Source: Octopus bimaculoides (Eukaryota). From it: a stretch of 64,000 bases of DNA. Of this stretch, positions 28,859-63,700 are shown piece by piece. Numbering within the stretch: the first letter of the stretch is position 1; each line of letters begins with the position of its first letter. Under the pieces are notes generated by a model. That model saw only the letters and a program-made list of their open reading frames with translations. It was not told the DNA's origin and made no database searches. The stretch covers positions 32,728,221 to 32,792,220 of the forward strand of contig NC_069004.1 of NCBI RefSeq assembly GCF_001194135.2, in the 5' to 3' direction. The position numbers were made by a program, and so were the translations under genes.

Positions 28859-29674
28859 CATCTGTCTTAAACCCTTTTGATACTGATGTGTCTGAAGCTG
28901 CTTCTGGTTCTGTCACAAGAGCTTCTTGTTTTAAAGATGTATAAATTAAAACCTTCCACCAACATTTCAGGTAAAAAACACCAGCTTAGTAATCCTTTCT
29001 ACTATAGACACAATTTGGTGGGGAGGGGCTAGTTAATTACATTGACCCCAGTGGTTCGACTGGTACATATTTTATCGACCACAAAAGGATGAAAGGCTAA
29101 GCCGACCCAGTTGACAGATGATGTGTCCCTAAGCATTTTGGTCGGTGTGCTAACAATTTTGCCAGCTCACTGCCTGACACCAGTTTCATAATGACAGATA
29201 TTCTACTAAATTTCTCATTTTTTAAAAATTAATTAAAACAAAGAAATTAATTAAAACAAAGCCATGTATTTCAAAGGAGACAGGGTAACAAAAGGGTCAG
29301 TTCATGTTCCAAACAACAGCATAATAATGACAAAGTTATTTTACTAAATTCTTCGTTGACTTCAAAATTAATTGAAACAAAAGCAGTGTGTTTTAACAGA
29401 AACAGGGTAACAAAGGGATTAATATAATAACAGTAATAATTTATTTTCATTTTTTTAAATTCCACTTTTGATTTCTAACTTTGGTACAAGCCTGATAATT
29501 TTTATGGAAGAGCTGTTTATTTTATCAACCTTGGAAGGATAGAAAAGAAAATTGAATCGTTGCAGAACCTGAACGCAGAATGTAAGGAAAAGGGGTTGAA
29601 GTCTTGCGAAACTTTTTAGTTTGGTGTTCTGTTGATTCAGTTACCATTCCAAATTCTAGCATTGGAACAAGACC

Positions 29675-29711
<37 letters not shown>

Positions 29712-30819
29712 GGGGCAAAATGGGTGACTCCCAGTCAGGGGCGTAGCTAGGGTAAATGGTACCCAGAGAAAGCATCGAAATTGTGCCCCCTCCCCAACCA
29801 AAAAGTGGAAACTTGCTTAGAAATTGCTTAAAGTTGGCTCCAAGTCTCACCCAGAGACCTCAAGAGACACGAGTTAGAAGTTCATGTTGGTGTTATGCTT
29901 AGGGTATCATATATTTGGTTTTGCTTAAGAAAACATAACAAAATTATAAGTTTGTTTTAAAATTTTATTATTATATAAGGTGGTGAGCTGGCAGAATTGT
30001 TAGCATGCTGGGCGACATGCATAGTGGTATTTCGTTTGTCCTTATGTTCTGAGTTCAAATTCTGCCAAGGCCAACTTTGCCTTTCATCTTTTCAGGTTCA
30101 ATAAATTAAGTACCAGTTGCATACTGGGGATCAATCTAATTGACTGGTTCCTTCCCCCAAAATTTCTTTCAGTTTCCGTCTACCAAATCCACTCACAAGG
30201 CTTTGGTCAGCCTGGAGTTATAGTAGAAGATACTTGCCCAAGGTGGCACACAGTGGGACTGAGCCCAGATCTATGTGATTCGGAAGCAAGCTTCTTACCA
30301 CACAGCCATGCCTGTGCCTATTGTGGATGAAAATATTTCTTATCATCATCATCATCATCTTTATTGTCATTATTGTCATACAACATAAGAACATATGTCA
30401 GAGGGTAATGAGCAAAGAGGTCCTCTATCCTGTCATTAAGGCTCTTGACCCCTTTTGTCTTTGCCCCAAACCCATATTTAGTGGTCTCAGGTTATTTCAT
30501 ATTCAACATCTTAAGTTGTTGTTCCTTATTGTTGTAGTTGTTGTTATTCATCTAGTTGTGTTGTTGTCTTTCTATGTAAATGTCAACCCACTCCACACCA
30601 CCACCATTCAGCTGGAATATAAACGGTGGTGGTGGTGTGGAGTGGGGAGATAAGGTATATTTCAGTTTCAGGTAAGTCGTCTGATTTAATAAGACGTGTC
30701 TCACCTTGTCTAAGTCTTAATCTTAAAATAACATTAAAAATTAATTAATTTTTAAAAAATACTGCTGCTGCAGGCATTGGTAAAATTTGAACTCTTGTTT
30801 CTTTAACTAACCATCTTAA

Positions 30820-33878: not shown

Positions 33879-36599
33879 ACATGCACCAAACACACACACA
33901 CACACACATATAGATAGATAGATATATCGAGATAGACTCACATACTTCCTTCTCCTTCATCCGACTTGTATTCATCATTCATTGCTCTCCACCACCCTAT
34001 CTATCATCGATTACATCCACCCCTCAGCCTTGCTATTACTAGGCGGGTCTAGCGATTACACAGAGGCTCATTGGCTTAACTCAACTCAGTTTGACCTACA
34101 AACACCCTCTGTGCAGCCACCCCCCACCCCACACAAATTATGGGTTTCATAGTTAAGGGTGTGCTTTGGTCATAGACACACACAGTGGGAGGAGGGGGTG
34201 CAACTGTTGATGGGATATGAACCTCAACCAGTACCCTTTGAGTTAGACTTACAACTGCAACTCACTGTCGTTCTCTTTCCCTGTTCCAGTTTGTTCCCAC
34301 CCCCACCTTTGCAGCACTCTCTCTCTCTCTCTCTCCCTTACATTTCTTTCTCTTTCTGTCCAACTCTCCTACAAATCTATCTATTTATATATATATGTAT
34401 GTATGTATGTACATGGATACACACATACACACACACATTCATCTATTAATGATAGCCATAAATATGCCTGAAATTTAATTGGACCCAGAAATTTAAAGTG
34501 TCATTCTTGACTGTTGGACAGAAGTGGATGAAAGAAAATCTAGAATCAGAAGAAACTAATAATAGTCTGTGCAGTGTCGAATAGTTGAAATAGAATACGA
34601 CTGGTGGCTAAGTAGCTACAAAATAGTCTGTGAACTTCATGGGATGAAATATAACACTGGTGATTTATATCGGGGAAAAACATTTATATTGCCTGTTTTG
34701 GACAGCAAGAAGTTGCAGGTGCTCTGTGGCGCAATCAGTATTCTGGTCATCTAGAAAGCAAAAGATATGGTTTCCAAATCTTGTTGGAGGGACTGCTTGC
34801 CATAAGTGTGAGAATCTGAGAGGGGAATATGTTGAATAAACTCATAATTAACTGATCCCTCGTGTATTTTCTTCTACCCAAAGCCAGGAACTTTCCAGCA
34901 ACCCCCTTGTACATATGCATAGTCACACGGGCCCTTACACTCACAACACATTCATTTACTCCTACAATTGTATTAGTGGCATTAGACAAGATACTCCATT
35001 TCCCAGTGTACAAATCACTGTTGTTTAATAATATACACACGCAAACATTCAGACATCATCATCATCGTCATTAACTTCTAAAGTTGTAATCTTTTTAATT
35101 TTTTTTTTTTTTTGTTAAATTAATTAAATGCCATTGTTTGTTCTTGTTGATATTGTCCTTGATGATTTTTCTCTTCTATTTATGAAAAACTGAATGCTTT
35201 AAATGCACCTGTCTGATTCCCCCCACCCCACCACTATCGCCACCATTCACCCACGGTATTAGTTTCATATTGTCATCATTGTTAGTTTACTTTTAGGTAC
35301 ATTTAGTCTTGTTCCCTAGCGCTGACAGCATCATCCCTGCCACCATCAACCCACACAGCTTCTTGTGTTGTGCCTCAGCAAAATCCCAAACTAAATTGCT
35401 TGATAGATAAAAAAGTTAACTTAGATATGAGACAAACTAGCAAAAGGATTAGACATTGGTAACGAAGTAGCTTAGATGGCTTAGACATTGATATTAGACT
35501 ATATAGCTTAGACAGTGGCATTAGACAAAATACCCTATTTCCTGGCATACAAGTCACTGTAGCATAGAGTGTACACGTTCAAACATCCTTACTCTCTTCC
35601 CAAATCATCATTGTCTTCCTAAAATTCACACATAATTTTTAGTCTCTACAAAATTTGACTGGTATGCCAGAAAATACAGTAGCAAAATGGCTTAAACATT
35701 GATGTTAGCAAAGTGCAAAATAATACATAGCTACCCACTGACCGCAATCCACCACACGCAATACCTCAAATTGCTTCTAGTTATATATATATGAATTAAC
35801 AGCTAAGTTTTGATGCACAAGATACTATGAGCATTAACATTGAACAGAATAACATTTCCAGTCTAATTTTGAAAGAAAAATGTGGCAGATGCTCTGTAAT
35901 GAAAGCAGTTATGATGTCACTTGAAAGACAATATATACCAGACAGTGTCAAGGGTGTGGCCCATAGCCTATTCTTTTCTTCTCTCAAAGTAATGCTTATA
36001 ATGTCTTAGGACATATTAGAATGCTAGCTGTTAATTTATATATANNNNNNNNNNNNNNNNNNNNNNNNNNNNNNNNNNNNNNNNNNNNNNNNNNNNNNNN
36101 NNNNNNNNNNNNNNNNNNNNNNNNNNNNNNNNNNNNNNNNNNNNNNNNNNNNNNNNNNNNNNNNNNNNNNNNNNNNNNNNNNNNNNNNNNNNNNNNNNNN
36201 NNNNNNNNNNNNNNNNNNNNNNNNNNNNNNNNNNNNNNNNNNNNNNNNNNNNNNNNNNNNNNNNNNNNNNNNNNNNNNNNNNNNNNNNNNNNNNNNNNNN
36301 NNNNNNNNNNNNNNNNNNNNNNNNNNNNNNNNNNNNNNNNNNNNNNNNNNNNNNNNNNNNNNNNNNNNNNNNNNNNNNNNNNNNNNNNNNNNNNNNNNNN
36401 NNNNNNNNNNNNNNNNNNNNNNNNNNNNNNNNNNNNNNNNNNNNNNNNNNNNNNNNNNNNNNNNNNNNNNNNNNNNNNNNNNNNNNNNNNNNNNNNNNNN
36501 NNNNNNNNNNNNNNNNNNNNNNNNNNNNNNNNNNNNNNNNNNNNNNNNNNNNNNNNNNNNNNNNNNNNNNNNNNNNNNNNNNNNNNNNNNNNNNNNNNN

Positions 36600-38640: not shown

Positions 38641-40059
38641 AAACATGACCGATGGGTCTAATACGAAATCCACCTCCTACTATTAATTATTACNNNNNNN
38701 NNNNNNNNNNNNNNNNNNNNNNNNNNNNNNNNNNNNNNNNNNNNNNNNNNNNNNNNNNNNNNNNNNNNNNNNNNNNNNNNNNNNNNNNNNNNNNNNNNNN
38801 NNNNNNNNNNNNNNNNNNNNNNNNNNNNNNNNNNNNNNNNNNNNNNNNNNNNNNNNNNNNNNNNNNNNNNNNNNNNNNNNNNNNNNNNNNNNNNNNNNNN
38901 NNNNNNNNNNNNNNNNNNNNNNNNNNNNNNNNNNNNNNNNNNNNNNNNNNNNNNNNNNNNNNNNNNNNNNNNNNNNNNNNNNNNNNNNNNNNNNNNNNNN
39001 NNNNNNNNNNNNNNNNNNNNNNNNNNNNNNNNNNNNNNNNNNNNNNNNNNNNNNNNNNNNNNNNNNNNNNNNNNNNNNNNNNNNNNNNNNNNNNNNNNNN
39101 NNNATATATATATATATATATATATAAATGTATTTTTATAATACCTTGCCAACTTAAAGGATGCATTCATCTTCAAAATATAGCCGTGTAGTGTATTAAG
39201 AGAATTAAAAAAAGACCATTTGAGGAACGTAGTCTACTTTTAATTTAAAGCCATGGAAAAGAAATTCTCTTTTTATTTAACTATTGTTTGAATCTTGATT
39301 AAATGAAAGGGAATAATTAATTCTTAATTATCTGTATATGCATCTCTTTAAACTGAAACCATTGTGTGCGTGTGTGTGTGTTTTAGAAACCTTGCTATTA
39401 GATGTTATGTGAGTGTGTTGCTGTTGTCGTAACTGTTAGCATTTCTCCTGTTTCTCTCAAACCACAGCACTGCTGCTGCGGGTTGCCTTGGCCTTCCTTC
39501 TTCTTGACCTTGTCCATACAATACAGCTTGGCTAAAGCGTGTTTTTTAGCAACCAAAAAAACCAGAGACCTTGTACTCTCTGAAAACAGTTTCTCAGTCA
39601 GAAGACTAGGGAGCTTGGTACCTGTCAAACAGCCTTTTAACTCTTTGGCATTCAGATTTCTCAGTCAAAAGTAATGCTTATTTATTCACATTGATATGAA
39701 TTAGTCATGCATTACAATGTAGCTTGATAATTTCAATGATGTGAATATTTTTAGAATAATACTGTAGGGTAAGTGTGAGAGGCAAGAGCTGGCCAGTTTG
39801 AAAGTAAAACAGGTAGATTATTTTGGCTGGACATGGCCAGTTTAAATGCTAAAGGGTGAAACCAACAGAAGACTAGAGAGTATGGTACCCTGTCAAGTGG
39901 TCTGCTCTGCCAGCAGATGACTAGAGACCATGGTACCTTGTCAAACATTCTTCTCAGCAACCAGGAAACTAGAGAGCATGGTACCAGGTCAATAGATTCT
40001 GTCTACAGTGGCTGGCCCCTTAGCCAAGAACTTCTGTCACTGTGTCACTAGTACAACTT

Positions 40060-40813: not shown

Positions 40814-43800
40814 TTATACATACACAGACACAGTAAACTAGTATATGCATGTGTACGTATGTATTTTAGCTCCCGAGTCTCCCTCCTAAATTTACTTAGA
40901 TTAGTTGTAGTTTTGCCCTAACTTGTTTCCCTATAAACATGTTGTATACCTCCCTCATGTGTATATATATATATATATATATGTATGTGTATGTACATGT
41001 GTAAGTACGTACGTATGGATGTGTGTGTAAGTAGATACGTACATCTTCGTTTCTGAATGTATATGTGAATTATAATCGTAAATATATCCCCATATGCACA
41101 CGAAACACACACACACTTGTTATTTTCCCATAATGCTTCAGTAGGACAGCTTTTTATATCGTTAGATAGTCATTAACACTATTTGTGCTACATTTTTTTA
41201 TGTATATGCGTGTGTGTGTATGTATATATATATATATATATATNNNNNNNNNNNNNNNNNNNNNNNNNNNNNNNNNNNNNNNNNNNNNNNNNNNNNNNNN
41301 NNNNNNNNNNNNNNNNNNNNNNNNNNNNNNNNNNNNNNNNNNNNNNNNNNNNNNNNNNNNNNNNNNNNNNNNNNNNNNNNNNNNNNNNNNNNNNNNNNNN
41401 NNNNNNNNNNNNNNNNNNNNNNNNNNNNNNNNNNNNNNNNNNNNNNNNNNNNNNNNNNNNNNNNNNNNNNNNNNNNNNNNNNNNNNNNNNNNNNNNNNNN
41501 NNNNNNNNNNNNNNNNNNNNNNNNNNNNNNNNNNNNNNNNNNNNNNNNNNNNNNNNNNNNNNNNNNNNNNNNNNNNNNNNNNNNNNNNNNNNNNNNNNNN
41601 NNNNNNNNNNNNNNNNNNNNNNNNNNNNNNNNNNNNNNNNATCTTTACCATTTTTGGACAAAATGCTTCATGGCATTCTTCCAGCTCTACATTCTGAATT
41701 CCAGTTCCGCTGAAGTTGACTTTACCTTTCATGTTTTTGTGGGGTCAATAAAATAAGTCCTACTTGACCAGTAGGGTCAACTTAATCGATTACCCCCCAC
41801 CCCAGAATTTCAGGCCTTGTACCTATAGTCATCATTATCATCATCGTTTAACGTCCACTTTCCATGCTGGCATGGGTTGGACAGTTTAACTGGGGTCTGG
41901 TGAGCCAGGAGGCTGCACCAGGCTCCAATCTGATTTGGCAGAGTTTCTACAGCTGGATGCCCTTCCTAATGCCAACCACTCCGAGAGTGTAGTGGGTGCT
42001 TTTACAAAACACCTGCAGGAGGACCGGTCAGGCGGTACTGGCAACAAACTCACTCGAATGTTGTTTTTCATGTGCCACCGGCACAAGTGCCAGTAAGGCG
42101 ACGCTGGTAATGAACACACTCGAATGATGCTTTCTATGTGCCACCAGCACAGGAGCCAGTCAGCGGCCCTGGCAACGATCACGCTCGGATGGTGCTCTTA
42201 GTGCTCCACTAGCAACAGTATGTTTTTTACCGCTAGGTCATCTGGTGATCTGGTAGACCTTTGATCAAAGACCTTCCATCTGTGACCAATCAGTATACAT
42301 ATTTTTATACAGACATAGTATATTCTAAGACTATGTTCACCCATGTGTCCTTCCTCTTCTTAAGATGATAGACTACAATTTCTGGGTGGTTGGCTGCTAT
42401 GTCTATAAAACTGAGCAACCAGGTAAAATACAAAAATAAAAAAAAAACTCAATCATTGGTAAATGAAGTCTTGTTCGTTAGGGATTATATCATTATGTCT
42501 CCAATCGACCAATATTTTGTTCAGAAGAAGCTTTATTTCTTCCCTTTAGCTATACAGAAACCACTCTTAAGAAATTCAACTTTGTTAATCTCCTTTAAAC
42601 CTGTTAGCTTTCGGATTACTCTGTCAAATTTAACGCTTATCTATTCACATTGTTTTGAATTAATCATGCATTATCTCATCACCATCATCATCATCGTTTA
42701 ACATCCACTTTCCATGCTAGCATGGGTTGGACAGTTTAACTGGGGACTGGTGAAACCAGATGGCTACGCCAGGCTCCAATCTGATTTGGCAGAGTTTCAA
42801 ATCAGATTCTCATAGCTTTGAGATTTCGATGTCATGATAGTTTATTTTTAGAATGATATTGTCTAGGGTAGGTGTGAGAGGCTGGATCTGACGGGTTTGG
42901 CCATAAAACAGGTAGGACATCTGGGCCTGATGTGACCAGTTTAACCCTTTGCCTGTCCAAAGCATTTCCATAAGTTTGTCCTGAACTACTATGCTTGTTT
43001 TCAGAGATTTACTTAGCCCTTGTTTCATACATTCTGAATTCTATGAAGCTTTCCTTTCATAAGTCCCAAATTACTCTGGTGGCTGACAAAAATTGGTGAA
43101 TGTGTATCATATATGATGTGTAGACATTAGGGAAATGTGTCCTGTGAATCGCATGTGATACACAGGACAGTCAAAGGTGCTAAGCTGTTCTGTTAGAAGA
43201 GACAGTCTTAGTGTGACATTGGTGAATTATGTTACACATTATGTGTCCTTATAGTGAGGCTATCTGTGACATTAACCCTTTACCTGCACAAAGCATTTTA
43301 ATGCTTGTCCTAAGCATCTACACTGTTTCCAGACTTTTAGTCAACCCTTGTTACATGTGTTCTGAGTAATATAAAGCTCTCCTTTCATAAGTCCCAAATT
43401 ACTGTGGTGATTAAAAGAAAATTAGGATTGTGTTATCATATATGAAGAGGTTACTTCCAAAACCAGATACATGCATCGGAATGACTTTTGGAGTAATTGT
43501 TTAAAACCACAACTTGAATATATCTGATTTTGGTTGGAAGACTAAGATTCGTCTCCTGTCTATGGGGCATCTGTCCCAGGTTGACTGCAAAAAAATTTCG
43601 CATGCGTGAAACCAGCAGCTTACAGATTGTGTTTTAATGGTTATCATGAAATCAACCAAATATGCACTTATACCAGTTCTGAAAGTAAGCATGATGTGTG
43701 GACATTAGGGAAACAGGCCCTGTGTATCCCATGTGATACACGAAACAGTCAAAGGTGTTAAGCTGTTCTGTTGGAAGAGACAGTCTTAGTGTGACATTGG

Positions 43801-48647: not shown

Positions 48648-48968
48648 AGGAAGGGGGGATAATGGGAGGAGGGAGAGGTGAAATGGTAGGCGAGGGAGAT
48701 TGAGGAAAGAGAAACAAGTGTTTATGCAAAAGAGGAGGAGGAGAAACACAAAAGTCTGAAGAGAGAGATGCATACAAGTCCCTCTCCCCCTCATATTCAT
48801 GTTCTTACCCCCTCTCTCTCATACACACTGGTATCTCTCGCTCTCACAGTAATCTCTCTGTTTTGTGTTTTCTTTTTGCACAAACGCTTGTTTTTTTTTG
48901 TTATTTTTTCTCCATGTTTCTCTCCTCCCACTACATCACTTTCTCTCTCCTCCCACTGTTCCTCGCTC

Positions 48969-49003
48969 TATAAAGCCACCCTCTCTATCTGGCCCATCAA
49001 TCC
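48969..49003 (+). promoter_or_regulatory. Candidate internal Pol II core promoter (TATA plus initiator)
   Basis: TATAAAG at 48969-48975 and YYANWYY-type TCAATCC at 48997-49003, putting the +1 A (48999) 30 nt from the first T of the TATA. CpG-retaining surroundings; no ATG between 48999 and 49203. Confidence 0.45.
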
Positions 49004-49106
49004 TCCGAAACCCGGTGCTGCCGACGTACAGGTACACAGAATCCTGTCGTTCTCCTGACGCTGTTCCAAGTCCACCTTGGTTACATTTAATAACCAACCA
49101 CAACAG

Positions 49107-49156
<50 letters not shown>

Positions 49157-49203
49157 TCTAAATCTGTCCGTAATTATCCACAAAAGCAAGTTTATCGTCT
49201 AGA

Positions 49204-49293
49204 ATGGGTCTGTTCCAGAGGAAAGCCTTTCTCAAACAGAAACTCGCCTGTATTTTGGCCGTCCTACGTAACAACTTCAATCACAACAAACAA
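49204..49293 (+). CDS. OXR1: Candidate alternative first coding exon of a short TLDc-only isoform (MGLFQRKAFLKQKLACILAVLRNNFNHNKQ)
   Basis: First ATG after a TATA/Inr pair, in context agaATGG (A at -3, G at +4). 30 open codons, then CAA|GTAAGG, a phase-0 donor compatible with the exon at 58454. No transcript evidence available. Confidence 0.55.
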
Positions 49294-49688
49294 GTAAGGT
49301 TTCGCTATCTCTTTCTCTCTTGGTTTCCGCTTCTATTTAAAAAAAAATATCCTTCCTTCTTATCGTAATGTTTCTTTTGTTTTCTAAGAGAGGTACTAAA
49401 ACTATTAATTGTATAATAAATAATTTTATTAATTACCTCTCCATTTTCTTATTCTCTAAATATATAAATATATGAACCACGGTTTATAATGGTTACCTCA
49501 TAGTTGAACTTTCTTATTTTCGTTGTATTTATGATCCCTTAATGAGGTTTATTGTCTTTACTTGATTATATCTATACAGGAAAGAATTGGTAGTATACCA
49601 TAATACTGCCGGGTATCTGGTAATTCTTCGGGTGAACGAACTCTATTTTGTACTCGGATACGTTCTTAACGGAATACACCTCAACTAC

Positions 49689-49760
<72 letters not shown>

Positions 49761-50346
49761 GTGTGTGTGAGAGAGAGAAATATGTAGCTCTCTCAGACTT
49801 TTTGTTTATCCTCATATACGTGTGTGTGTGTCACCTGTACTGACCAGAATATCGAATGTTGCTGCTCATCGCTGGCCACGATGCGTTTCCAATTCTTTCT
49901 CGGTTGCGATTTTCTTTTCAATCTTGGCTCAGATTGTTTAAATTTTGTTTGTTTTTTTTTGTTTTTTTGTTTTTTGTAATTAAAACAAAAACAAAAACGA
50001 TTCGCCTGTTATTTCTTGTAATTCCGAAAGCTCGCTTGCTCCTTTCTCAAGCGTCACAAATCTACCTAAGGATGTGGGAAATTATACCAGATATAATACT
50101 ATACAGAATACCGAAAGGATCTTCACCTCTTACATCACACATTTCTTCTTACTTCAACGTCGAGATGGTATAATTTCCTGGGAGAGAGATAATTTTGCGG
50201 CTGAGGATAGCTTTACATTGTAGATTATACACATATTATATTATGTTATATTATATTATATTATATTATACACATGTAGAGCTTGAAACACGTGTACCGC
50301 AGAATCCTTTGTAGTTTTGTTGTTATTTTTTTCTTTTGGATTTACA

Positions 50347-50380
<34 letters not shown>

Positions 50381-53289
50381 GTTTATATTTATATAAAGGG
50401 CATTATTACAGAAAAATAATAACGCCACACAGTGGACTTCTATATAGATAAAACAAATAATAAATGAGTATATGCATATATACGTACAGGTATGTGCATA
50501 CCTACGTCTACCTGTATATATAGGTGCATATCTGGGTACAGGACATTGCAAACAAAACGTAGACAATAAAAAATAATAATAACCAGAGTACAGAAAACAC
50601 ACAAGCCACATAGAGAACATTTTCCTTCAGTCCTTCTGTTTTAATGCCTTCTTATTAATTAACACACTCACCGGTTCAATTTCCACTCGTTATTTTTCTT
50701 CTGAAATTTTTTTTGCTTCTTGCAATCTCTTCAATCGTTGTTGACTCTTGTCCGTTCGTTTATTTCTTGTTTCTACACCAGTTTTTTAGTGACTCGATGG
50801 TGGCAGTTGTGTTCGTTGTTTGGACCCATGCCAAGCTCTGACCGAACAAACGTACGATCAAAGATGTTCCTTCCGGCCATGACCACCCGTCCTTTGTTTT
50901 CTTTGCTTAATCCAGCGGTGTGCCTATAGTAGAAAGGATTATTTCTAGCAGGTCGAGCGACCGCATACATAAAGTCCGTGTGTGTGTATATATATATAGC
51001 GACCATATTCATAAAGTCCGTGTGTGTGTTTGTATATATATATATATAGTATTGTGTGTGTGATGCTTATCTGTCTACCTCTAGCCCCTCCCCGATAAGT
51101 TTGTTGTGGCTGTTTTTATTTTGTCAACCATAATCGATTGTTATTTAATCATTATCTTAATTCAGGGACCAGATAAAATTAAAATCGGTCAAATAACTGG
51201 GGTAGGAATTCGATCGTTCATTTCTCCCCCACCCCCACCCCGGTGTCCTCGAAGTGTGTGGCCTTGTACTTAATCGCTACTATTTTTCGAATAACGATAA
51301 GGATAATTAATGAGCCGAAGCCAGCAATTTTATAAGGAAGGGATTAGTCGATTACGTCGACCCTAGTGTTCAACTGGTTATGTATTTCATCGACCCCCGA
51401 AAGTATGAAAGGCAAAATCGACCTCGGTGGCATTTGAACTCGGAACGTCAGGAGCCGAAAGCAACGCCACCAAACACCCNNNNNNNNNNNNNNNNNNNNN
51501 NNNNNNNNNNNNNNNNNNNNNNNNNNNNNNNNNNNNNNNNNNNNNNNNNNNNNNNNNNNNNNNNNNNNNNNNNNNNNNNNNNNNNNNNNNNNNNNNNNNN
51601 NNNNNNNNNNNNNNNNNNNNNNNNNNNNNNNNNNNNNNNNNNNNNNNNNNNNNNNNNNNNNNNNNNNNNNNNNNNNNNNNNNNNNNNNNNNNNNNNNNNN
51701 NNNNNNNNNNNNNNNNNNNNNNNNNNNNNNNNNNNNNNNNNNNNNNNNNNNNNNNNNNNNNNNNNNNNNNNNNNNNNNNNNNNNNNNNNNNNNNNNNNNN
51801 NNNNNNNNNNNNNNNNNNNNNNNNNNNNNNNNNNNNNNNNNNNNNNNNNNNNNNNNNNNNNNNNNNNNNNNNNNNNNNNNNNNNNNNNNNNNNNNNNNNN
51901 NNNNNNNNNNNNNNNNNNNNNNNNNNNNNNNNNNNNNNNNNNNNNNNNNNNNNNNNNNNNNNNNNNNNNNNNNNNNNNNNNNNNNNNNNNNNNNNNNNNN
52001 NNNNNNNNNNNNNNNNNNNNNNNNNNNNNNNNNNNNNNNNNNNNNNNNNNNNNNNNNNNNNNNNNNNNNNNNNNNNNNNNNNNNNNNNNNNNNNNNNNNN
52101 NNNNNNNNNNNNNNNNNNNNNNNNNNNNNNNNNNNNNNNNNNNNNNNNNNNNNNNNNNNNNNNNNNNNNNNNNNNNNNNNNNNNNNNNNNNNNNNNNNNN
52201 NNNNNNNNNNNNNNNNNNNNNNNNNNNNNNNNNNNNNNNNNNNNNNNNNNNNNNNNNNNNNNNNNNNNNNNNTGATAGTGTATAGAGGAATATATAATTT
52301 TAATAGAGTTCCAACTCTATCTGTTTTTTATGTTTTATTTATATTCTTATAAAATTAATGTGAGGTATGGAATATATAATATAAATAGTAAAATGAAACG
52401 AAGTATTGAATGTCTTATTGAGTATTAAATATATATATATAGGGGCTAGTATACTTTCCTGCTTTATAGCAGTCATCAAGGTCCCGTCGTGTGGGACAAT
52501 GCTAATAATAAAAATAATAGTTATTTCAAATTTAGGCACAAGACCAGTTATATATTGTCATCATCAGGGTGGACCCAAGAGAAGTAGGGGAGGCTGAGGT
52601 GCACATGCCCCCTCGAAAAAAGAAGTGCGCCCTTCTAGATAATTTTGCATATGTTGACTATTTTCTTCTTCATCTGCAAATACATGGCCTTATTCTTATG
52701 TCAGGAATCATTTTTTTAAGCTCACATAAGCTCTGGACTTTTAGCAATTTTTAGGAATATTTCCTGTAAATCTTAATACCACCAAGGCATGGTTCAAAGA
52801 GTCGAGGATAATCTTGAGTTCATGGTTTGAAATAAAAATGGAAAATAAATTTTACATAAATATATTTTCAAAGATAAATATTATGGTTATGTTGATGAAA
52901 TCAACTCCCCCCCCCCCAAATAAAAACAGCATTATTAATTAAGAAGCAAGCATATACCACCCATGTATGTACAATTTAAACCACAAACTGAAAATTTCCT
53001 GTGGATAAAGACCTTCAACAATCAACATATCATTTAGAAAAGTAAAAAAGAAACATGAATATCTGTTCAATTAATCGGATATTTTATTGAAAACACATCA
53101 TGCAAGAAGCACCCAGGACACTCTGTAAAGTGGATGGCATTTAGGAAGGGCGTCCAGTTGTGGAAACTATGCCAAAACAGAGGACCTTGATGCAGTCCTC
53201 AAAGCATCCAACCCATGCCAGCATGGAAAACTCGTGTTGAATGATGACCATGATGATGATGAAGAATGTCAAGAATTACTTTAGCATGA

Positions 53290-56429: not shown

Positions 56430-56895
56430 AGCACACACACCTGTGTATATATATGTGTGCATATCTATATATATATATAGAGAGAGAGGGGGGGGTGTAA
56501 TGCAATATTTAAAAGCTATTTATTGCTTAATCTATTTTGAGTTCTATTGCTAAAAATTAAGATATAGGTTTATCTTTAGATATCTGTGGAGTGGGGGAGT
56601 GTGTGTAAGATAGGTGGGAGGTAGAGTGGCCTGGATATGATCTGTCAAGAATTTGATAGCCTTTGATCTCTTCCGGCACCATGCTCACGGCTTGTTCAAG
56701 TCTCACCTAGGGCCAGCAGGATGGCCACCTCACAACACTCTCCTCCTCCTCTTCTTCTTCCTCTTCATTTAAACCAATAATCACTCATGCCATTTATCAC
56801 CTCATCTACTATTCAAAGTCATCCTAATTATCACTCATTATTTATTGACTGATAATTAATCTATTTTCAAGATGGTTTCTATTTCCGACCGAGTA

Positions 56896-57397: not shown

Positions 57398-57595
57398 AAG
57401 GTGGCGTGCTGGACGAAGTGCTTAGCAGTATTTTGCCTGTCACTATGTTCAGAGTTCAAATTCCGTCGAGGTTGACTTTGTCTTTCATCCTTTTGGTGGG
57501 GTCGATTAAATAAGTACCAGTTACGCACTGGGGTCAATGTAATCGACTTACCCCCTCCTTACAAATTTCAGGCCTTGTAACTATAGTAGAAAGGA
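57398..57595 (+). mobile_element. SINE family B (copies about 2575-2780, 14335-14520, 29978-30165, 62755-62972, 62985-63165; inverted about 14560-14690, 29010-29170, 51330-51470)
   Basis: Recurrent 'TTCTGAGTTCAAATTC..CC.AGGTC.ACTTTGCCTTTCATCCTTT.GGGGTC.ATAAA.TAAGTACCAG' with a B-box-like GAGTTCAAAT and an (ATT)n tail. Confidence 0.85.
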
Positions 57596-58453: not shown

Positions 58454-58567
58454 ATTGTAACCAGTGATGAAGATTACCGTAAGAAGTCCCTCGAGGTTGA
58501 CGACACCCCTGTCCTACCCGAGTTCGTTGGCGAAACACATATCCTCACAGAAGAGCAAATTACTACG
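58454..58567 (+). CDS. OXR1: OXR1/NCOA7-family exon leading into the TLDc domain
   Basis: CTTGTAG acceptor and GTAAGC donor; 114 nt, phase 0-0. Encodes IVTSDEDYRKKSLEVDDTPVLPEFVGETHILTEEQITT, resembling the 'P.L...S.LL....I..L' start of TLDc. Confidence 0.88.
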
Positions 58568-59855: not shown

Positions 59856-60008
59856 TTGGTGGAGCATCTACCCGGCCGTACAGTGGGTTACTCCTGGATA
59901 CTCATATACAGTACAGACTTACACGGCTTCAGTTTGAAAACTCTCTACCGAGACATGACCAACTACGAGAGTCCAGTGTTATTGACTGTCCGTAACACTC
60001 AGAGTCAA
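59856..60008 (+). CDS. OXR1: TLDc domain exon
   Basis: TTTTTCTGCAG acceptor and GTGAGT donor; 153 nt. Encodes LVEHLPGRTVGYSWILIYSTDLHGFSLKTLYRDMTNYESPVLLTVRNTQSQ, with the TLDc 'HLP.R..GY.W.L.YST..HG.SLKTLYR' signature. Confidence 0.97.
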
Positions 60009-60185: not shown

Positions 60186-60281
60186 GTGTTTGGTGCTTTA
60201 ATATCATGTCCTCTGAAAGTTAGTGATCATTTCTACGGCACCGGAGAATCCTTCCTGTTCACCTTCCATCCAAAGTTCAGG
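60186..60281 (+). CDS. OXR1: TLDc domain exon
   Basis: TTACAG acceptor and GTGAGT donor; 96 nt. Encodes VFGALISCPLKVSDHFYGTGESFLFTFHPKFR, with the TLDc 'VFGA...FYGTGE.F.F' motif. Confidence 0.97.
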
Positions 60282-62306: not shown

Positions 62307-62380
62307 ATTTTCCGTTGGACTGGAGAAAATAATTTCTTTGTAAAAGGCAACCAAGAAAGTTTGGTTATTGGTGCTGGAAA
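62307..62380 (+). CDS. OXR1: TLDc domain exon
   Basis: TTTTGTTCCAG acceptor and GTAAGT donor; 74 nt. Encodes IFRWTGENNFFVKGNQESLVIGAG(K), with the TLDc 'F.WTG.N.FF.KG...SL..G.G' motif. Ends in phase 2. Confidence 0.97.
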
Positions 62381-63564
62381 GTAAGTGCAAAGCATCAATA
62401 AGCGTCCCAGTGTTTTCTCTCCTTAAGCAGCTCTGCACCTTTCCTCTATTTCATTCATATCCTTTACCTTAGTCACCTTTTTCAAGCCTTAATGGTTATA
62501 CTCTACTCTCGACTGCAAATCAATCCAATGAGAGAGAAACTATGTGGTAGAAGCACAAGGTGAATAGAAAGTGAGTGGCTGGACAGAGGGGGCAATAGTG
62601 GGGGCAGAATCGTTAAGAACTGGAAAAAAATACCTTAAAATTTTTCCTCCAGTTCTTTGTTTTGAGTTCAAATCCTGCTGAGGTCAACTTTACCTTTCAT
62701 CCCTGCAAAATAGCTGGCTTTGTGCCGTAATTGGAAACCATTAGTATTACTATTAAGGCGGTGGGCTAGCAGAACCATTAGCAGGCCAGGCAAAATGCTT
62801 ATCAGCATTTTGTCTGTCTTTACAATTCCGAGTTCAAATTCTGCCAAGGTCGACTTTGCTTTTCATCTTTTCGGGGTTGATGAAATAAGTACCAGTTAAA
62901 TACTGGGGTCGATATAATCGACCAGCTCACTCCCCCACAATTTCAGGTCTTGTCTCTATAGTAGAAACGATTATTAAGCTGCCAGACAAATTTGTTTAGC
63001 AGCATTTCTTTCAGTTTCACATTCTGGGTTCAAATGCCATTGCAGTCAACTTTGCCTTTCACTCTTTCAGGGGTTGATAGATAATTAAGCACCAGTTGAG
63101 CCCTGGGATCGACATGGTTGACCGGCCATCTCCTACGAAATTCCAGGCCTTGTGCCTAAAGTAGAAATACTGAGTGGGGTAAGCACTGACGATGGTGTCA
63201 CATAAAAAGCACCCAGTGCCACTCAGTGAAGTGGTCGGCATTAGGAAGAGCATCCAGCTGAGGAAACCAAGTCAAAACAAACTAAGGAACCTGGTACAGT
63301 CCCGGTCCTTGCAATTTCCTCTCAAGTCATCCAACCTATGCTGACCAATGATGACGTATTGGTGGAACCAGTAGTGTCAGATGAAATGCTTTGTGGTATT
63401 TAGTTACCGTCCTTTACACTGTGAGTTCAAATCTCACCAAGGTTATCTTAGTTTTAAAGTCATTTAAATGAACAAGTTTTCCCCTCCCACTAAAATCTAT
63501 TGTTTGTTACCAACGTCAGACATTGTTGTTAATCTATTGTTTGTTATTGTTTTGTTATTTCCAG

Positions 63565-63700
63565 GGGCTTCTTTGGTTTATGGTTCGACGGAGATCTCTA
63601 CCATGGCCGGAGCCATCCTTGTGATACTTTTGGCAATGACGTCCTTTGCGAAGAAGAAGATTTTGTTGTGCAAGCGTTTGAAGCTTGGGGTTTCGTATAA
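63565..63700 (+). CDS. OXR1: TLDc domain terminal coding exon with stop codon
   Basis: TTATTTCCAG acceptor, phase 2. Encodes [44 protein letters not shown], with TAA at 63698-63700; matches the TLDc C-terminus '[17 protein letters not shown]...EDF....E.W.F'. Confidence 0.97.

What the first reader, a model, noticed from the sequence alone, without database searches (positions are those of the whole stretch)
48960..49300. Hidden internal promoter and first exon predicting a ~220-aa TLDc-only OXR1/NCOA7 isoform
Seen in sequence, inside the 52-kb intron: TATAAAG at 48969, an initiator-like TCAATCC whose A lies 30 nt downstream, no upstream ATG, a Kozak-strong ATG at 49204, 30 open codons (MGLFQRKAFLKQKLACILAVLRNNFNHNKQ) and a phase-0 donor CAA|GTAAGG. 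Splicing to 58454 gives 30+38+51+32+69 = 220 aa. Established: vertebrate OXR1 and NCOA7 (including the interferon-induced NCOA7 short isoform) and Drosophila mtd make TLDc-only isoforms from internal promoters at this junction, and TLDc proteins bind the V-ATPase. Inference: this is a separately regulated mollusc short isoform, and its basic Gly2-starting N-peptide could be a membrane or organelle targeting signal.
Basis: partly seen in the sequence, partly recalled or inferred. Interest (0 to 1): 0.8.

Follow-up and report, generated by a model that had tools for sequence, protein, structure and literature searches.

The report
Predicted internal promoter for short OXR1 isoform
Inside a 52-kb intron of an OXR1/NCOA7-type gene there is very probably a second promoter and first exon that would make a 220-residue protein carrying only the TLDc domain. 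This arrangement is already known from vertebrates and insects, so it is a good annotation rather than a new kind of biology.

Summary
These are TATAAAG at 48969, TCAATCC with its A at 48999, no ATG up to 49204, a 30-codon ORF and a phase-0 donor CAA|GTAAGG at 49293|49294. Splicing to 58454 gives a 220-aa protein with a complete TLDc domain, collinear with NCOA7-B and OXR1-C.

I found independent support. The window is strongly CpG-depleted (o/e 0.32) except for one block, 49,000 to at least 51,479 (o/e 1.15, about 10 SD above other windows). The best-fit 5' edge of the block is at 49,000, on the predicted start site. An old SINE inside it keeps 7 of 8 ancestral CpGs, against 18 of 70 in other copies. 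The block is therefore long unmethylated, not a young insertion.

No transcript or cross-species test was possible, because the databases hold no close relative. The N-peptide is basic and predicted helical. It fails the simple myristoylation pattern and resembles no other short-isoform N-peptide.

Verdict: observation confirmed, interpretation partly supported (about 0.65 that the exon is real). It is a new member of a known kind and of modest interest.

The parts
6178..6363 (+). Last long-isoform exon before the 52-kb intron. It ends ...ISKDWE with donor GAG|GTAAGC in phase 0.
   Evidence: tblastn of OXR1/NCOA7 proteins; reading frame and donor
48705..48715 (+). ISRE/IRF-like core GAAAGAGAAAC, about 290 nt upstream of the predicted TSS. 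This is a lead only.
   Evidence: 4 matches in the window against 0.68 expected. It lies in GA-rich low-complexity DNA.
48969..48975 (+). TATA box, TATAAAG
48997..49003 (+). Initiator TCAATCC (YYANWYY). The predicted +1 A is at 48999, 30 nt after the TATA T.
   Evidence: It is one of only 3 TATAAA+Inr pairs in 128 kb.
48999..49203 (+). Predicted 205-nt 5' UTR without any ATG. It contains an (AT)22 microsatellite at 49109-49153.
49204..49293 (+). Coding part of the predicted alternative first exon: 30 codons, MGLFQRKAFLKQKLACILAVLRNNFNHNKQ. Kozak context A(-3)/G(+4). Donor CAA|GTAAGG in phase 0.
   Evidence: The donor scores 4.95 bits, against 4.7-6.75 for the gene's own donors.
49000..51479 (.). 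CpG-undepleted (inferred germline-unmethylated) island with 86 CpG and o/e 1.15. It runs into the N gap at 51480-52272. CpG o/e is back to about 0.3 after the gap.
58454..58567 (+). Shared exon 2: 38 aa, IVTSDEDYRKK...EEQITT. Its phase-0 acceptor is used by both the long and the predicted short isoform.
59856..60008 (+). TLDc exon, 51 aa
60186..60281 (+). TLDc exon, 32 aa
62307..62380 (+). TLDc exon: 24 codons plus 2 nt, donor AA|GTAAGT
63565..63700 (+). Last TLDc exon: 1 nt plus 44 codons plus TAA

Best explanation
An intragenic alternative promoter (TATA box at 48969, initiator A at 48999) drives a transcript whose first exon runs from about 48999 to 49293. That exon carries a 205-nt ATG-free leader and 30 codons. 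It splices from the phase-0 donor at 49293 to the shared phase-0 acceptor at 58454.

The product is a 220-aa protein with three parts: a lineage-specific basic N-terminal helix (residues 3-25), a disordered linker (26-52) and a complete TLDc domain (56-219). It is the counterpart of vertebrate OXR1-C and NCOA7-AS/B and of insect mtd short isoforms. By homology its TLDc domain would bind the V1 sector of the V-ATPase and modulate its assembly or activity. The N-peptide would supply isoform-specific localisation or partner binding.

Shown here: all sequence signals, the intact spliced reading frame and TLDc domain, the same splice junction as in other phyla, and a long-standing unmethylated CpG island beginning at the predicted TSS.

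Inferred: that transcription starts there, that the splice is used, that the protein binds V-ATPase, and any role for the N-peptide.
For: 1. All motifs, the frame and the phases were verified.

2. The spliced product has a full TLDc domain (PF07534, residues 56-219, 166.6 bits). It aligns end to end with NCOA7-B in V-ATPase complexes (7uzj, E 1.8e-59) and with zebrafish OXR2 TLDc (4acj).

3. Short isoforms of insects, mites and vertebrates all join an unrelated N-peptide at the homologous junction, (I/L/V)(I/L/V)(T/S)..(E/D). Unique first coding exons for OXR1-C and NCOA7-B, and an internal interferon-regulated promoter for NCOA7-AS, are documented (PMC5614904, PMC8329711).

4. The donor scores 4.95 bits, within the range of the gene's own donors (4.72-6.75). 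It is the best phase-0 donor ending an ATG-initiated ORF in the whole intron.

5. The composite of signals is expected 0.005 times per intron in shuffles and is seen once. TATAAA+Inr pairs are rare: 3 per 128 kb.

6. Independent evidence comes from CpG content. CpG o/e is 0.32 across the window, with TpG and CpA at 1.3. In 49,000-51,479 it is 1.15, with TpG and CpA about 1.0. Ninety-six other 2.48-kb windows range 0.15-0.48. The maximum-likelihood change point is 49,000, with a gain of 29 log-likelihood units and a 2-unit support interval of 48,950-49,000.

7. A SINE copy inside the block is as diverged at non-CpG sites (17%) as nine other copies (11-24%). Yet it keeps 7/8 ancestral CpGs against 18/70 (Fisher p = 0.0011). 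The block is therefore old and protected from methylation, not newly inserted.

8. In octopus, methylation marks gene bodies, and a large class of methylated genes lacks it at the TSS and promoter (PMC9476566).

9. The N-peptide has net charge +6 and no acidic residue, like OXR1-C (+6/+7) and several insect first exons. Only 0.85% of the window's ORF peptides share this property.

10. An in-frame TAA at 49171 and the lack of any phase-0 acceptor before the ATG exclude use as an in-frame cassette exon (direct reading).
Against: There is no transcript, junction, CAGE or proteomic evidence.

Conservation could not be tested. The 5.8-billion-protein collection holds nothing closer than 68% identity to the TLDc part. 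It holds nothing sharing words with exon 1 or even with the constitutive exon 2. The metagenome scans were empty.

The N-peptide shows no significant similarity to any other short-isoform N-peptide. The shared FLKQK word has p of about 0.21.

The thresholds of the composite scan were chosen after seeing the candidate.

The island lies almost entirely downstream of the proposed TSS, and its 3' end is lost in a 793-nt gap. The true TSS could therefore lie elsewhere within it, and an unmethylated island can also mark an enhancer.

The leader contains a 45-nt (AT)n microsatellite and CT-rich low-complexity DNA. This partly explains the absence of upstream ATGs.
Confidence: 0.65

Rival explanations
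1. The ORF, donor, TATA box and initiator are a chance constellation in a long AT-rich intron. The CpG island is real but marks something else, such as an intronic enhancer or insulator, or the promoter of an unrelated (for example non-coding or antisense) transcript.
For: There are 20 ATG-to-phase-0-donor ORFs in the intron. ORF plus donor plus Kozak alone occurs in about 20% of shuffled introns. The N-peptide has no homologue. The island extends downstream only, and its far end is hidden by a gap. No transcript data exist.
Against: The island edge (48,950-49,000) coincides with one of only three TATAAA+Inr pairs in 128 kb. That pair has the right orientation and is followed by the best phase-0 donor ending an ATG-initiated ORF in the intron. 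The minus strand has no TATA+Inr in the island. No Rfam family reaches its gathering score there. The gene family is known to place short-isoform first exons in exactly this intron (PMC5614904).
Confidence: 0.2
2. The island is a genuine alternative promoter for a TLDc-only isoform, but the first coding exon is a different one. Candidates are the 6-codon ORF MHIYVQ at 50472-50489, with the strong donor CAG|GTATGT, or an exon hidden in the 51480-52272 gap.
For: The donor at 50489 scores 6.06 bits, is in phase 0 and lies centrally in the island. Very short first-exon peptides exist in some arthropod short isoforms. 793 nt of the island region are unsequenced.
Against: The Kozak context is poor (T at -3, C at +4) and the ORF sits in TA/TG low-complexity DNA. 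No TATA+Inr precedes it. The 49204 exon has every signal and sits at the island edge.
Confidence: 0.1
3. The CpG-rich block is a recent insertion, a duplication of unmethylated DNA, or an assembly artefact. It therefore says nothing about a promoter.
For: The block ends in an assembly gap. It differs in GC content (0.35 against 0.45 just upstream).
Against: The 5' change point lies inside a contig (the gaps are at 41244-41640 and 51480-52272). The SINE within the block is as old as other copies by non-CpG divergence but retains its CpGs. The block has no other copy in the window and no transposon-like ORF.
Confidence: 0.04

Closest known systems
Human/mouse OXR1-C (shortest OXR1 isoform, NP_001185464)
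   Same: It has a unique first coding exon in the intron just upstream of the exon beginning (L/I)ITT.ED. The product is about 216 aa and consists almost only of TLDc. The N-peptide is basic with no acidic residues (MSRLWYGKKGRKHQPVNRKCT, +7). Sources; PMC5614904.
   Different: The N-peptides share no sequence similarity. The peptide here is longer (30 aa), has an 8-residue hydrophobic stretch and is predicted to be a single helix.
NCOA7-AS / NCOA7-B (interferon-induced short isoform, 219 aa)
   Same: It is driven by an internal promoter and has a unique first exon joined at the homologous junction (…EPFVK|IITVEEAKRR). Its size is nearly identical (219 against 220 aa). The TLDc part aligns over residues 44-219 to the chain seen bound to V-ATPase (7uzj) (PMC8329711).
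   Different: The NCOA7-AS N-terminal domain forms a beta-hairpin that binds the PX domain of SNX5/6 (PMC13543948). The peptide here is predicted helical and basic, and lacks that motif. Interferon regulation cannot be assumed. Only a single ISRE-like core was seen, at about -290.
Insect mustard (mtd) / 'TLD domain-containing protein 2' short isoforms
   Same: Many annotated isoforms of 200-230 aa have alternative N-peptides joined at VLSMS(E/D), the homologous junction. Several are strongly basic. A short TLDc-only mtd transcript is functional in fly immunity (PMC5614904, PMC3684835).
   Different: A recurrent insect motif, K(F/Y)LK(Q/T)(K/R)TK, lies directly before the junction. The FLKQK word in the candidate lies 17 residues from the junction, and the match is not significant.
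N-myristoylated TLDc proteins (yeast Rtc5, human mEAK7/TLDC1)
   Same: They have Gly at position 2 and a TLDc domain that binds V-ATPase. In Rtc5, N-terminal lipidation is needed for vacuole-membrane localisation (PMC11066047).
   Different: [quoted passage not shown] Here residue 6 is Arg and the PROSITE pattern fails. The TLDc part is of the OXR1/NCOA7 type, not the mEAK7 type (about 204-221 bits against about 66-70 bits).

Membership tests
OXR1/NCOA7-type TLDc protein | Complete C-terminal TLDc domain (PF07534) of the OXR1/NCOA7 subtype | tested here: met
   Pfam TLD covers residues 56-219, 166.6 bits against a cut-off of 24.5. The best PDB matches are zebrafish OXR2 (4acj) and NCOA7 (7uzj, 7obp), at 202-221 bits. 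mEAK7 scores about 66-70 and skywalker/TBC1D24 78.
TLDc-only short isoform from an alternative first exon (OXR1-C / NCOA7-AS/B / mtd-short type) | A unique first coding exon lying in the intron immediately upstream of the shared exon that begins (I/L/V)(I/V/L)(T/S)..(E/D), and phase-compatible with it | tested here: met
   The exon 49204-49293 has a phase-0 donor. The acceptor at 58454 is in phase 0 and starts IVTSDEDYRKK. The long-isoform donor at 6363 is in phase 0. The same junction is seen in 30+ short isoforms of other phyla.
TLDc-only short isoform from an alternative first exon (OXR1-C / NCOA7-AS/B / mtd-short type) | Product of about 200-230 aa: short N-peptide, then linker, then TLDc, lacking LysM and GRAM domains | tested here: met
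   The product is 220 aa. The AF2 model has a helix at 3-25, a low-confidence linker at 26-52 and a TLDc domain with pLDDT above 90.
TLDc-only short isoform from an alternative first exon (OXR1-C / NCOA7-AS/B / mtd-short type) | Its own promoter or TSS inside the gene | tested here: inconclusive
   Only indirect sequence evidence is available: TATA+Inr and an old CpG-undepleted island starting at 49,000. No CAGE, 5' RACE or chromatin data are available.
TLDc-only short isoform from an alternative first exon (OXR1-C / NCOA7-AS/B / mtd-short type) | Transcript evidence for the exon 1 to exon 2 junction | not testable with these tools
   The exact 220-aa product is absent from the 15-billion-protein collection. 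No protein there shares words with exon 1 or exon 2. The junction 28-mer is absent from metagenome and metatranscriptome contigs. The collections evidently lack this lineage.
TLDc-only short isoform from an alternative first exon (OXR1-C / NCOA7-AS/B / mtd-short type) | Conservation of the first exon (ATG, frame, donor) in related species | not testable with these tools
   No relative closer than 68% identity is retrievable. The Mytilus ortholog (L001) is too distant and shows no match to the peptide.
V-ATPase-binding TLDc proteins | Physical binding to V1 subunits | not testable with these tools
   This is inferred only, from 46-56% identity to NCOA7 and OXR1 chains solved in V-ATPase complexes and from the literature (PMC8608904, PMC11066047).
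N-myristoylated proteins | Gly2 followed by a permissive motif, G-{EDRKHPFYW}-x(2)-[STAGCN]-{P} | tested here: not met
   In MGLFQRK the fifth motif position is Arg, so PS00008 does not match. Dedicated predictors were not available.
Interferon/IRF-inducible NCOA7-AS-like promoter | Functional ISRE/IRF elements and induction by a viral mimic | tested here: inconclusive
   There is one ISRE-like core, GAAAGAGAAAC, at 48705-48715 in GA-rich DNA. The window has 4 such cores against 0.68 expected. There is no expression data.

The most novel reading that the evidence does not exclude
The unmethylated island marks a separately regulated, stress- or infection-inducible promoter (an ISRE/IRF-like core lies at about -290) in a cephalopod OXR1/NCOA7 gene. 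Its lineage-specific basic helical N-peptide targets the TLDc domain to V-ATPase-bearing membranes or to another organelle. That would be an independent, convergent invention of an NCOA7-AS-like inducible regulator of endolysosomal acidification in an animal without interferon.
Probability: 0.1. Interest if true: 0.55.

Novelty: new member of a known kind. Interest (0 to 1): 0.3.

Why it matters
If real, the exon adds a mollusc to the list of animals that make a TLDc-only OXR1/NCOA7 isoform from an internal promoter at one conserved exon junction. That would show the two-promoter architecture is ancestral to bilaterians, while the N-terminal peptide is reinvented in each lineage.

Practically, it would correct or extend the gene model. 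It would also supply a compact 220-aa protein for testing how N-peptides direct TLDc proteins to V-ATPase pools.

The CpG analysis also illustrates a cheap, sequence-only way to find alternative promoters inside methylated invertebrate gene bodies. The approach is to look for CpG-undepleted islands, with old repeats used as an internal clock to exclude young insertions.

Tried and rejected
1. Searching the 5.8-billion-protein collection with the 220-aa product gave only distant relatives, at most 68% identity. The 68-aa N-terminus gave no candidate at all, and the exact look-up failed. The collections lack this lineage, so absence says nothing about the exon.

3. Metagenome scans with back-translated peptide patterns and with the exon 1 to exon 2 junction 28-mer found nothing. 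The 30-aa peptide alone was too short a query for the search for related loci.

4. An apparent shared motif, FLKQK, with hymenopteran, hemipteran and dipteran short-isoform exons was tested against shuffles and window ORFs. It is not significant (p about 0.21) and was rejected as evidence of homology.

5. The amphipathic-helix idea was tested. The hydrophobic moment is 0.35, and 21% of random window ORF peptides exceed it. It is not supported as a distinctive feature.

6. Myristoylation: the PROSITE pattern is not met.

7. The young-insertion explanation of the CpG block was rejected by the SINE CpG-retention test and by the absence of repeats or transposon ORFs.

8. An Rfam scan of 47.0-53.5 kb gave only sub-threshold microsatellite artefacts.

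9. A literature search for the SINE sequence, intended to fix the taxon, gave no hits. A search for OXR1 with octopus gave nothing relevant.

10. Use of the exon as an in-frame cassette exon was rejected. There is an in-frame TAA at 49171 and no phase-0 AG between it and the ATG (direct reading).

Full report
**Observation.**
- TATAAAG occupies 48969-48975.
- TCAATCC occupies 48997-49003. It is a perfect YYANWYY initiator, and its A at 48999 lies 30 nt after the TATA T.
- No ATG occurs in any frame between 48976 and 49203.
- The ATG at 49204 has A at -3 and G at +4.
- Thirty open codons encode MGLFQRKAFLKQKLACILAVLRNNFNHNKQ.
- The exon ends at a phase-0 donor, CAA|GTAAGG.

The downstream exons are 58454-58567, 59856-60008, 60186-60281, 62307-62380 and 63565-63700. 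All have canonical splice sites. Joined to the 30 codons they give exactly 220 aa.

The upstream long-isoform exon is 6178-6363. It ends ...SKDWE with GAG|GTAAGC in phase 0. The intron is therefore 6364-58453 (52,090 nt), and the acceptor at 58454 can accept either donor in frame.

**Is it more than chance?** An ATG-initiated ORF ending at a phase-0 donor is common. Twenty of at least 15 codons occur on the + strand of this intron. The candidate has the best donor score of these, 4.95 bits on a generic metazoan matrix. That is within the 4.72-6.75 range of the gene's own donors. One of those real donors is also CAA|GT.

I then required five features together: at least 25 codons, a donor of at least 4 bits, R at -3 with G at +4, a TATAAA within 400 nt upstream, and no intervening ATG. 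This leaves one hit on the + strand (the candidate), none on the - strand and 0.005 per intron in 200 Markov resamples. The thresholds were set after the fact, and low-complexity DNA helps the ATG-free leader, so this is suggestive only. TATAAA followed by YYANWYY at +28 to +33 occurs just three times on both strands of the 64-kb window.

**What the product would be.** The spliced protein has a complete TLDc domain (PF07534, residues 56-219, 166.6 bits). It aligns over residues 44-219 with NCOA7-B as solved on the V-ATPase (7uzj) and with zebrafish OXR2 TLDc (4acj). An AlphaFold2 model built on 36 homologues has mean pLDDT 86.7. It gives a single helix for residues 3-25 (pLDDT 65-77), a low-confidence linker at 26-52 and a confident TLDc fold.

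Short isoforms of 200-230 aa from insects, mites and vertebrates were retrieved and read. All attach an unrelated N-peptide at the homologous junction:
- …|VLSMS(E/D) in insects
- …|LITTRED in OXR1-C
- …|IITVEEAKRR in NCOA7-AS/B

The literature confirms unique first coding exons for OXR1-C and NCOA7-B (PMC5614904). It also confirms an internal, interferon-regulated promoter for NCOA7-AS (PMC8329711), a functional TLDc-only mtd transcript in flies (PMC5614904, PMC3684835) and V-ATPase binding by TLDc proteins (PMC8608904, PMC11066047). The prior that some alternative first exon exists in this intron is therefore high.

**Independent evidence: a CpG island at the predicted start site.** The window as a whole is strongly CpG-depleted, with o/e 0.32 and TpG and CpA o/e of 1.3. 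This is the signature of germline methylation of a gene body.

One block is different. From 49,000 to at least 51,479 there are 86 CpGs, with o/e 1.15 and TpG and CpA about 1.0. The block then runs into the assembly gap at 51480-52272, and o/e is 0.3 again after the gap. Ninety-six other 2.48-kb windows range from 0.15 to 0.48 (mean 0.32, SD 0.08), so the block is about 10 SD out. A likelihood scan places the 5' change point at 49,000. This gains 29 log-likelihood units over a single rate, and only 48,950-49,000 fall within 2 units. That is on the TATA box and initiator.

The block is not a young insertion.
- It has no other copy in the window.
- It has no transposon-like ORF.
- Its 5' edge is inside a contig.
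- A SINE copy at 51320-51479 provides an internal clock. It is 17% diverged from the family consensus at non-CpG sites, like nine other copies in the window (11-24%). Yet it retains 7 of 8 ancestral CpGs against 18 of 70 for the others (Fisher p = 0.0011).

The region has therefore been protected from methylation for a long time. In octopus, methylation is concentrated on gene bodies, and a large class of methylated genes lacks it at the TSS and promoter (PMC9476566). From general knowledge, unmethylated islands inside methylated gene bodies commonly mark alternative promoters. This raises my confidence that transcription starts here to roughly two in three.

**Limits.** Nothing here shows a transcript. 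The protein collections contain no close relative. The best TLDc identity is 68% (Mytilus and an unnamed transcript), and no protein shares words even with the constitutive exon 2. The exact product is absent, and the metagenome scans were empty. Conservation and expression are therefore untested, not negative. I could not verify the taxon. AT-rich DNA, (TA)n and (TG)n microsatellites, the SINE family and the many gaps are compatible with a cephalopod draft assembly.

The island lies almost wholly downstream of the proposed TSS, and its far end is unsequenced. A different TSS or first exon within it remains possible. The only other in-phase option seen is a 6-codon ORF, MHIYVQ, at 50472-50489. 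It has a strong donor but a poor start context.

**The N-peptide.** The peptide has net charge +6 and no acidic residue. Only 0.85% of the window's ORF peptides share this, but it is typical of OXR1-C and of several insect first exons. It contains an 8-residue hydrophobic run (LACILAVL).

It is not significantly similar to any other short-isoform peptide. The FLKQK word shared with hymenopteran exons has p of about 0.21. Its hydrophobic moment is unremarkable. It fails the PROSITE myristoylation pattern because residue 6 is Arg. This differs from Rtc5 and mEAK7, where myristoylation is documented (PMC11066047). It also differs from the NCOA7-AS N-terminal domain, a beta-hairpin that binds SNX5/6 (PMC13543948). 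A targeting or partner-binding role is a reasonable guess, but no more than that.

**Comparison and verdict.** By architecture this is a member of the OXR1-C / NCOA7-AS/B / mtd-short class. It has the same gene family, the same junction, the same size and an alternative first exon. Membership is met for those features. It is inconclusive for promoter activity and untestable here for transcript evidence and conservation.

Novelty is that of a new member of a known kind, and the exon may already be present in RNA-seq-based annotations that I could not reach. Interest is modest (0.3). The most novel reading still open is a convergently evolved, inducible NCOA7-AS-like isoform in an interferon-less animal. 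It is hinted at only by one ISRE-like core at about -290, and I rate it at about 10%.

Noticed in passing
window 49000-51479 (to the gap at 51480-52272): This is the only CpG-undepleted block in the 64-kb window (o/e 1.15 against 0.32 elsewhere). Its 5' edge lies at the predicted TSS. It became the main independent evidence for the finding.
   Followed up: yes
window 2620-2745, 14365-14470, 14555-14695, 29010-29120, 30030-30165, 41680-41800, 51320-51479, 57440-57580, 62815-62935, 62985-63125: At least ten copies of one roughly 130-nt SINE-like repeat (consensus ...GTCGATTACATTGACCCCAGTG...AAAGGCAAAGTCGACCTTGGTGGAATTTGAACTCAGAATGTAA) lie on both strands. All but the copy inside the CpG island have lost most ancestral CpGs to TG or CA. 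The family was not identified.
   Followed up: partly
window 48705-48715: An ISRE/IRF-like core, GAAAGAGAAAC, lies about 290 nt upstream of the predicted TSS. The window has four such cores (also at 56875, 61051 and 61398) against 0.68 expected. It sits in GA-rich low-complexity DNA.
   Followed up: partly
window 50472-50489: A six-codon ORF, MHIYVQ, ends at a strong phase-0 donor CAG|GTATGT (6.06 bits) in the middle of the CpG island. It could be a second alternative first exon. Its start context is weak and it lies in low-complexity DNA.
   Followed up: partly
L001 (Mytilus galloprovincialis UYJE01010334.1) 7750-9250 and 4434-4544: The mussel ortholog is also CpG-depleted (o/e 0-0.7) and has one undepleted stretch (o/e 1.0-1.44). 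That stretch lies in the intron after the junction exon, just upstream of the TLDc exons. The annotation splits the gene there into a LysM gene and a 149-aa TLD gene. The equivalent of the 52-kb intron is only about 3.5 kb. It holds a 37-codon ATG ORF ending at a consensus phase-0 donor, AAG|GTAAGT.
   Followed up: partly
proteins P0019, P0030, P0053, P0094: Short mtd/TLDc isoforms of a sand fly, a parasitoid wasp, a kissing bug and an orchid bee share a basic first-exon motif, K(F/Y)LK(Q/T/Y)(K/R/L)(T)K, immediately before the VLSMS junction. This suggests one ancient insect short-isoform exon. It is not significantly related to the candidate peptide.
   Followed up: partly
window-wide (N runs at 7984-8625, 9591-9826, 11238-11749, 23645-23944, 24643-25038, 36045-36599, 38694-39103, 41244-41640, 51480-52272 and smaller ones): The intron is interrupted by 13 assembly gaps, mostly flanked by (TA)n microsatellites. 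About 4.3 kb are unknown sequence, so further exons or promoters could be hidden.
   Followed up: no
protein searches: No protein in the 5.8-billion-sequence collection is more than 68% identical to this TLDc domain. None shares words with the constitutive exon 2. The lineage of the window is effectively unrepresented in the searchable collections.
   Followed up: yes
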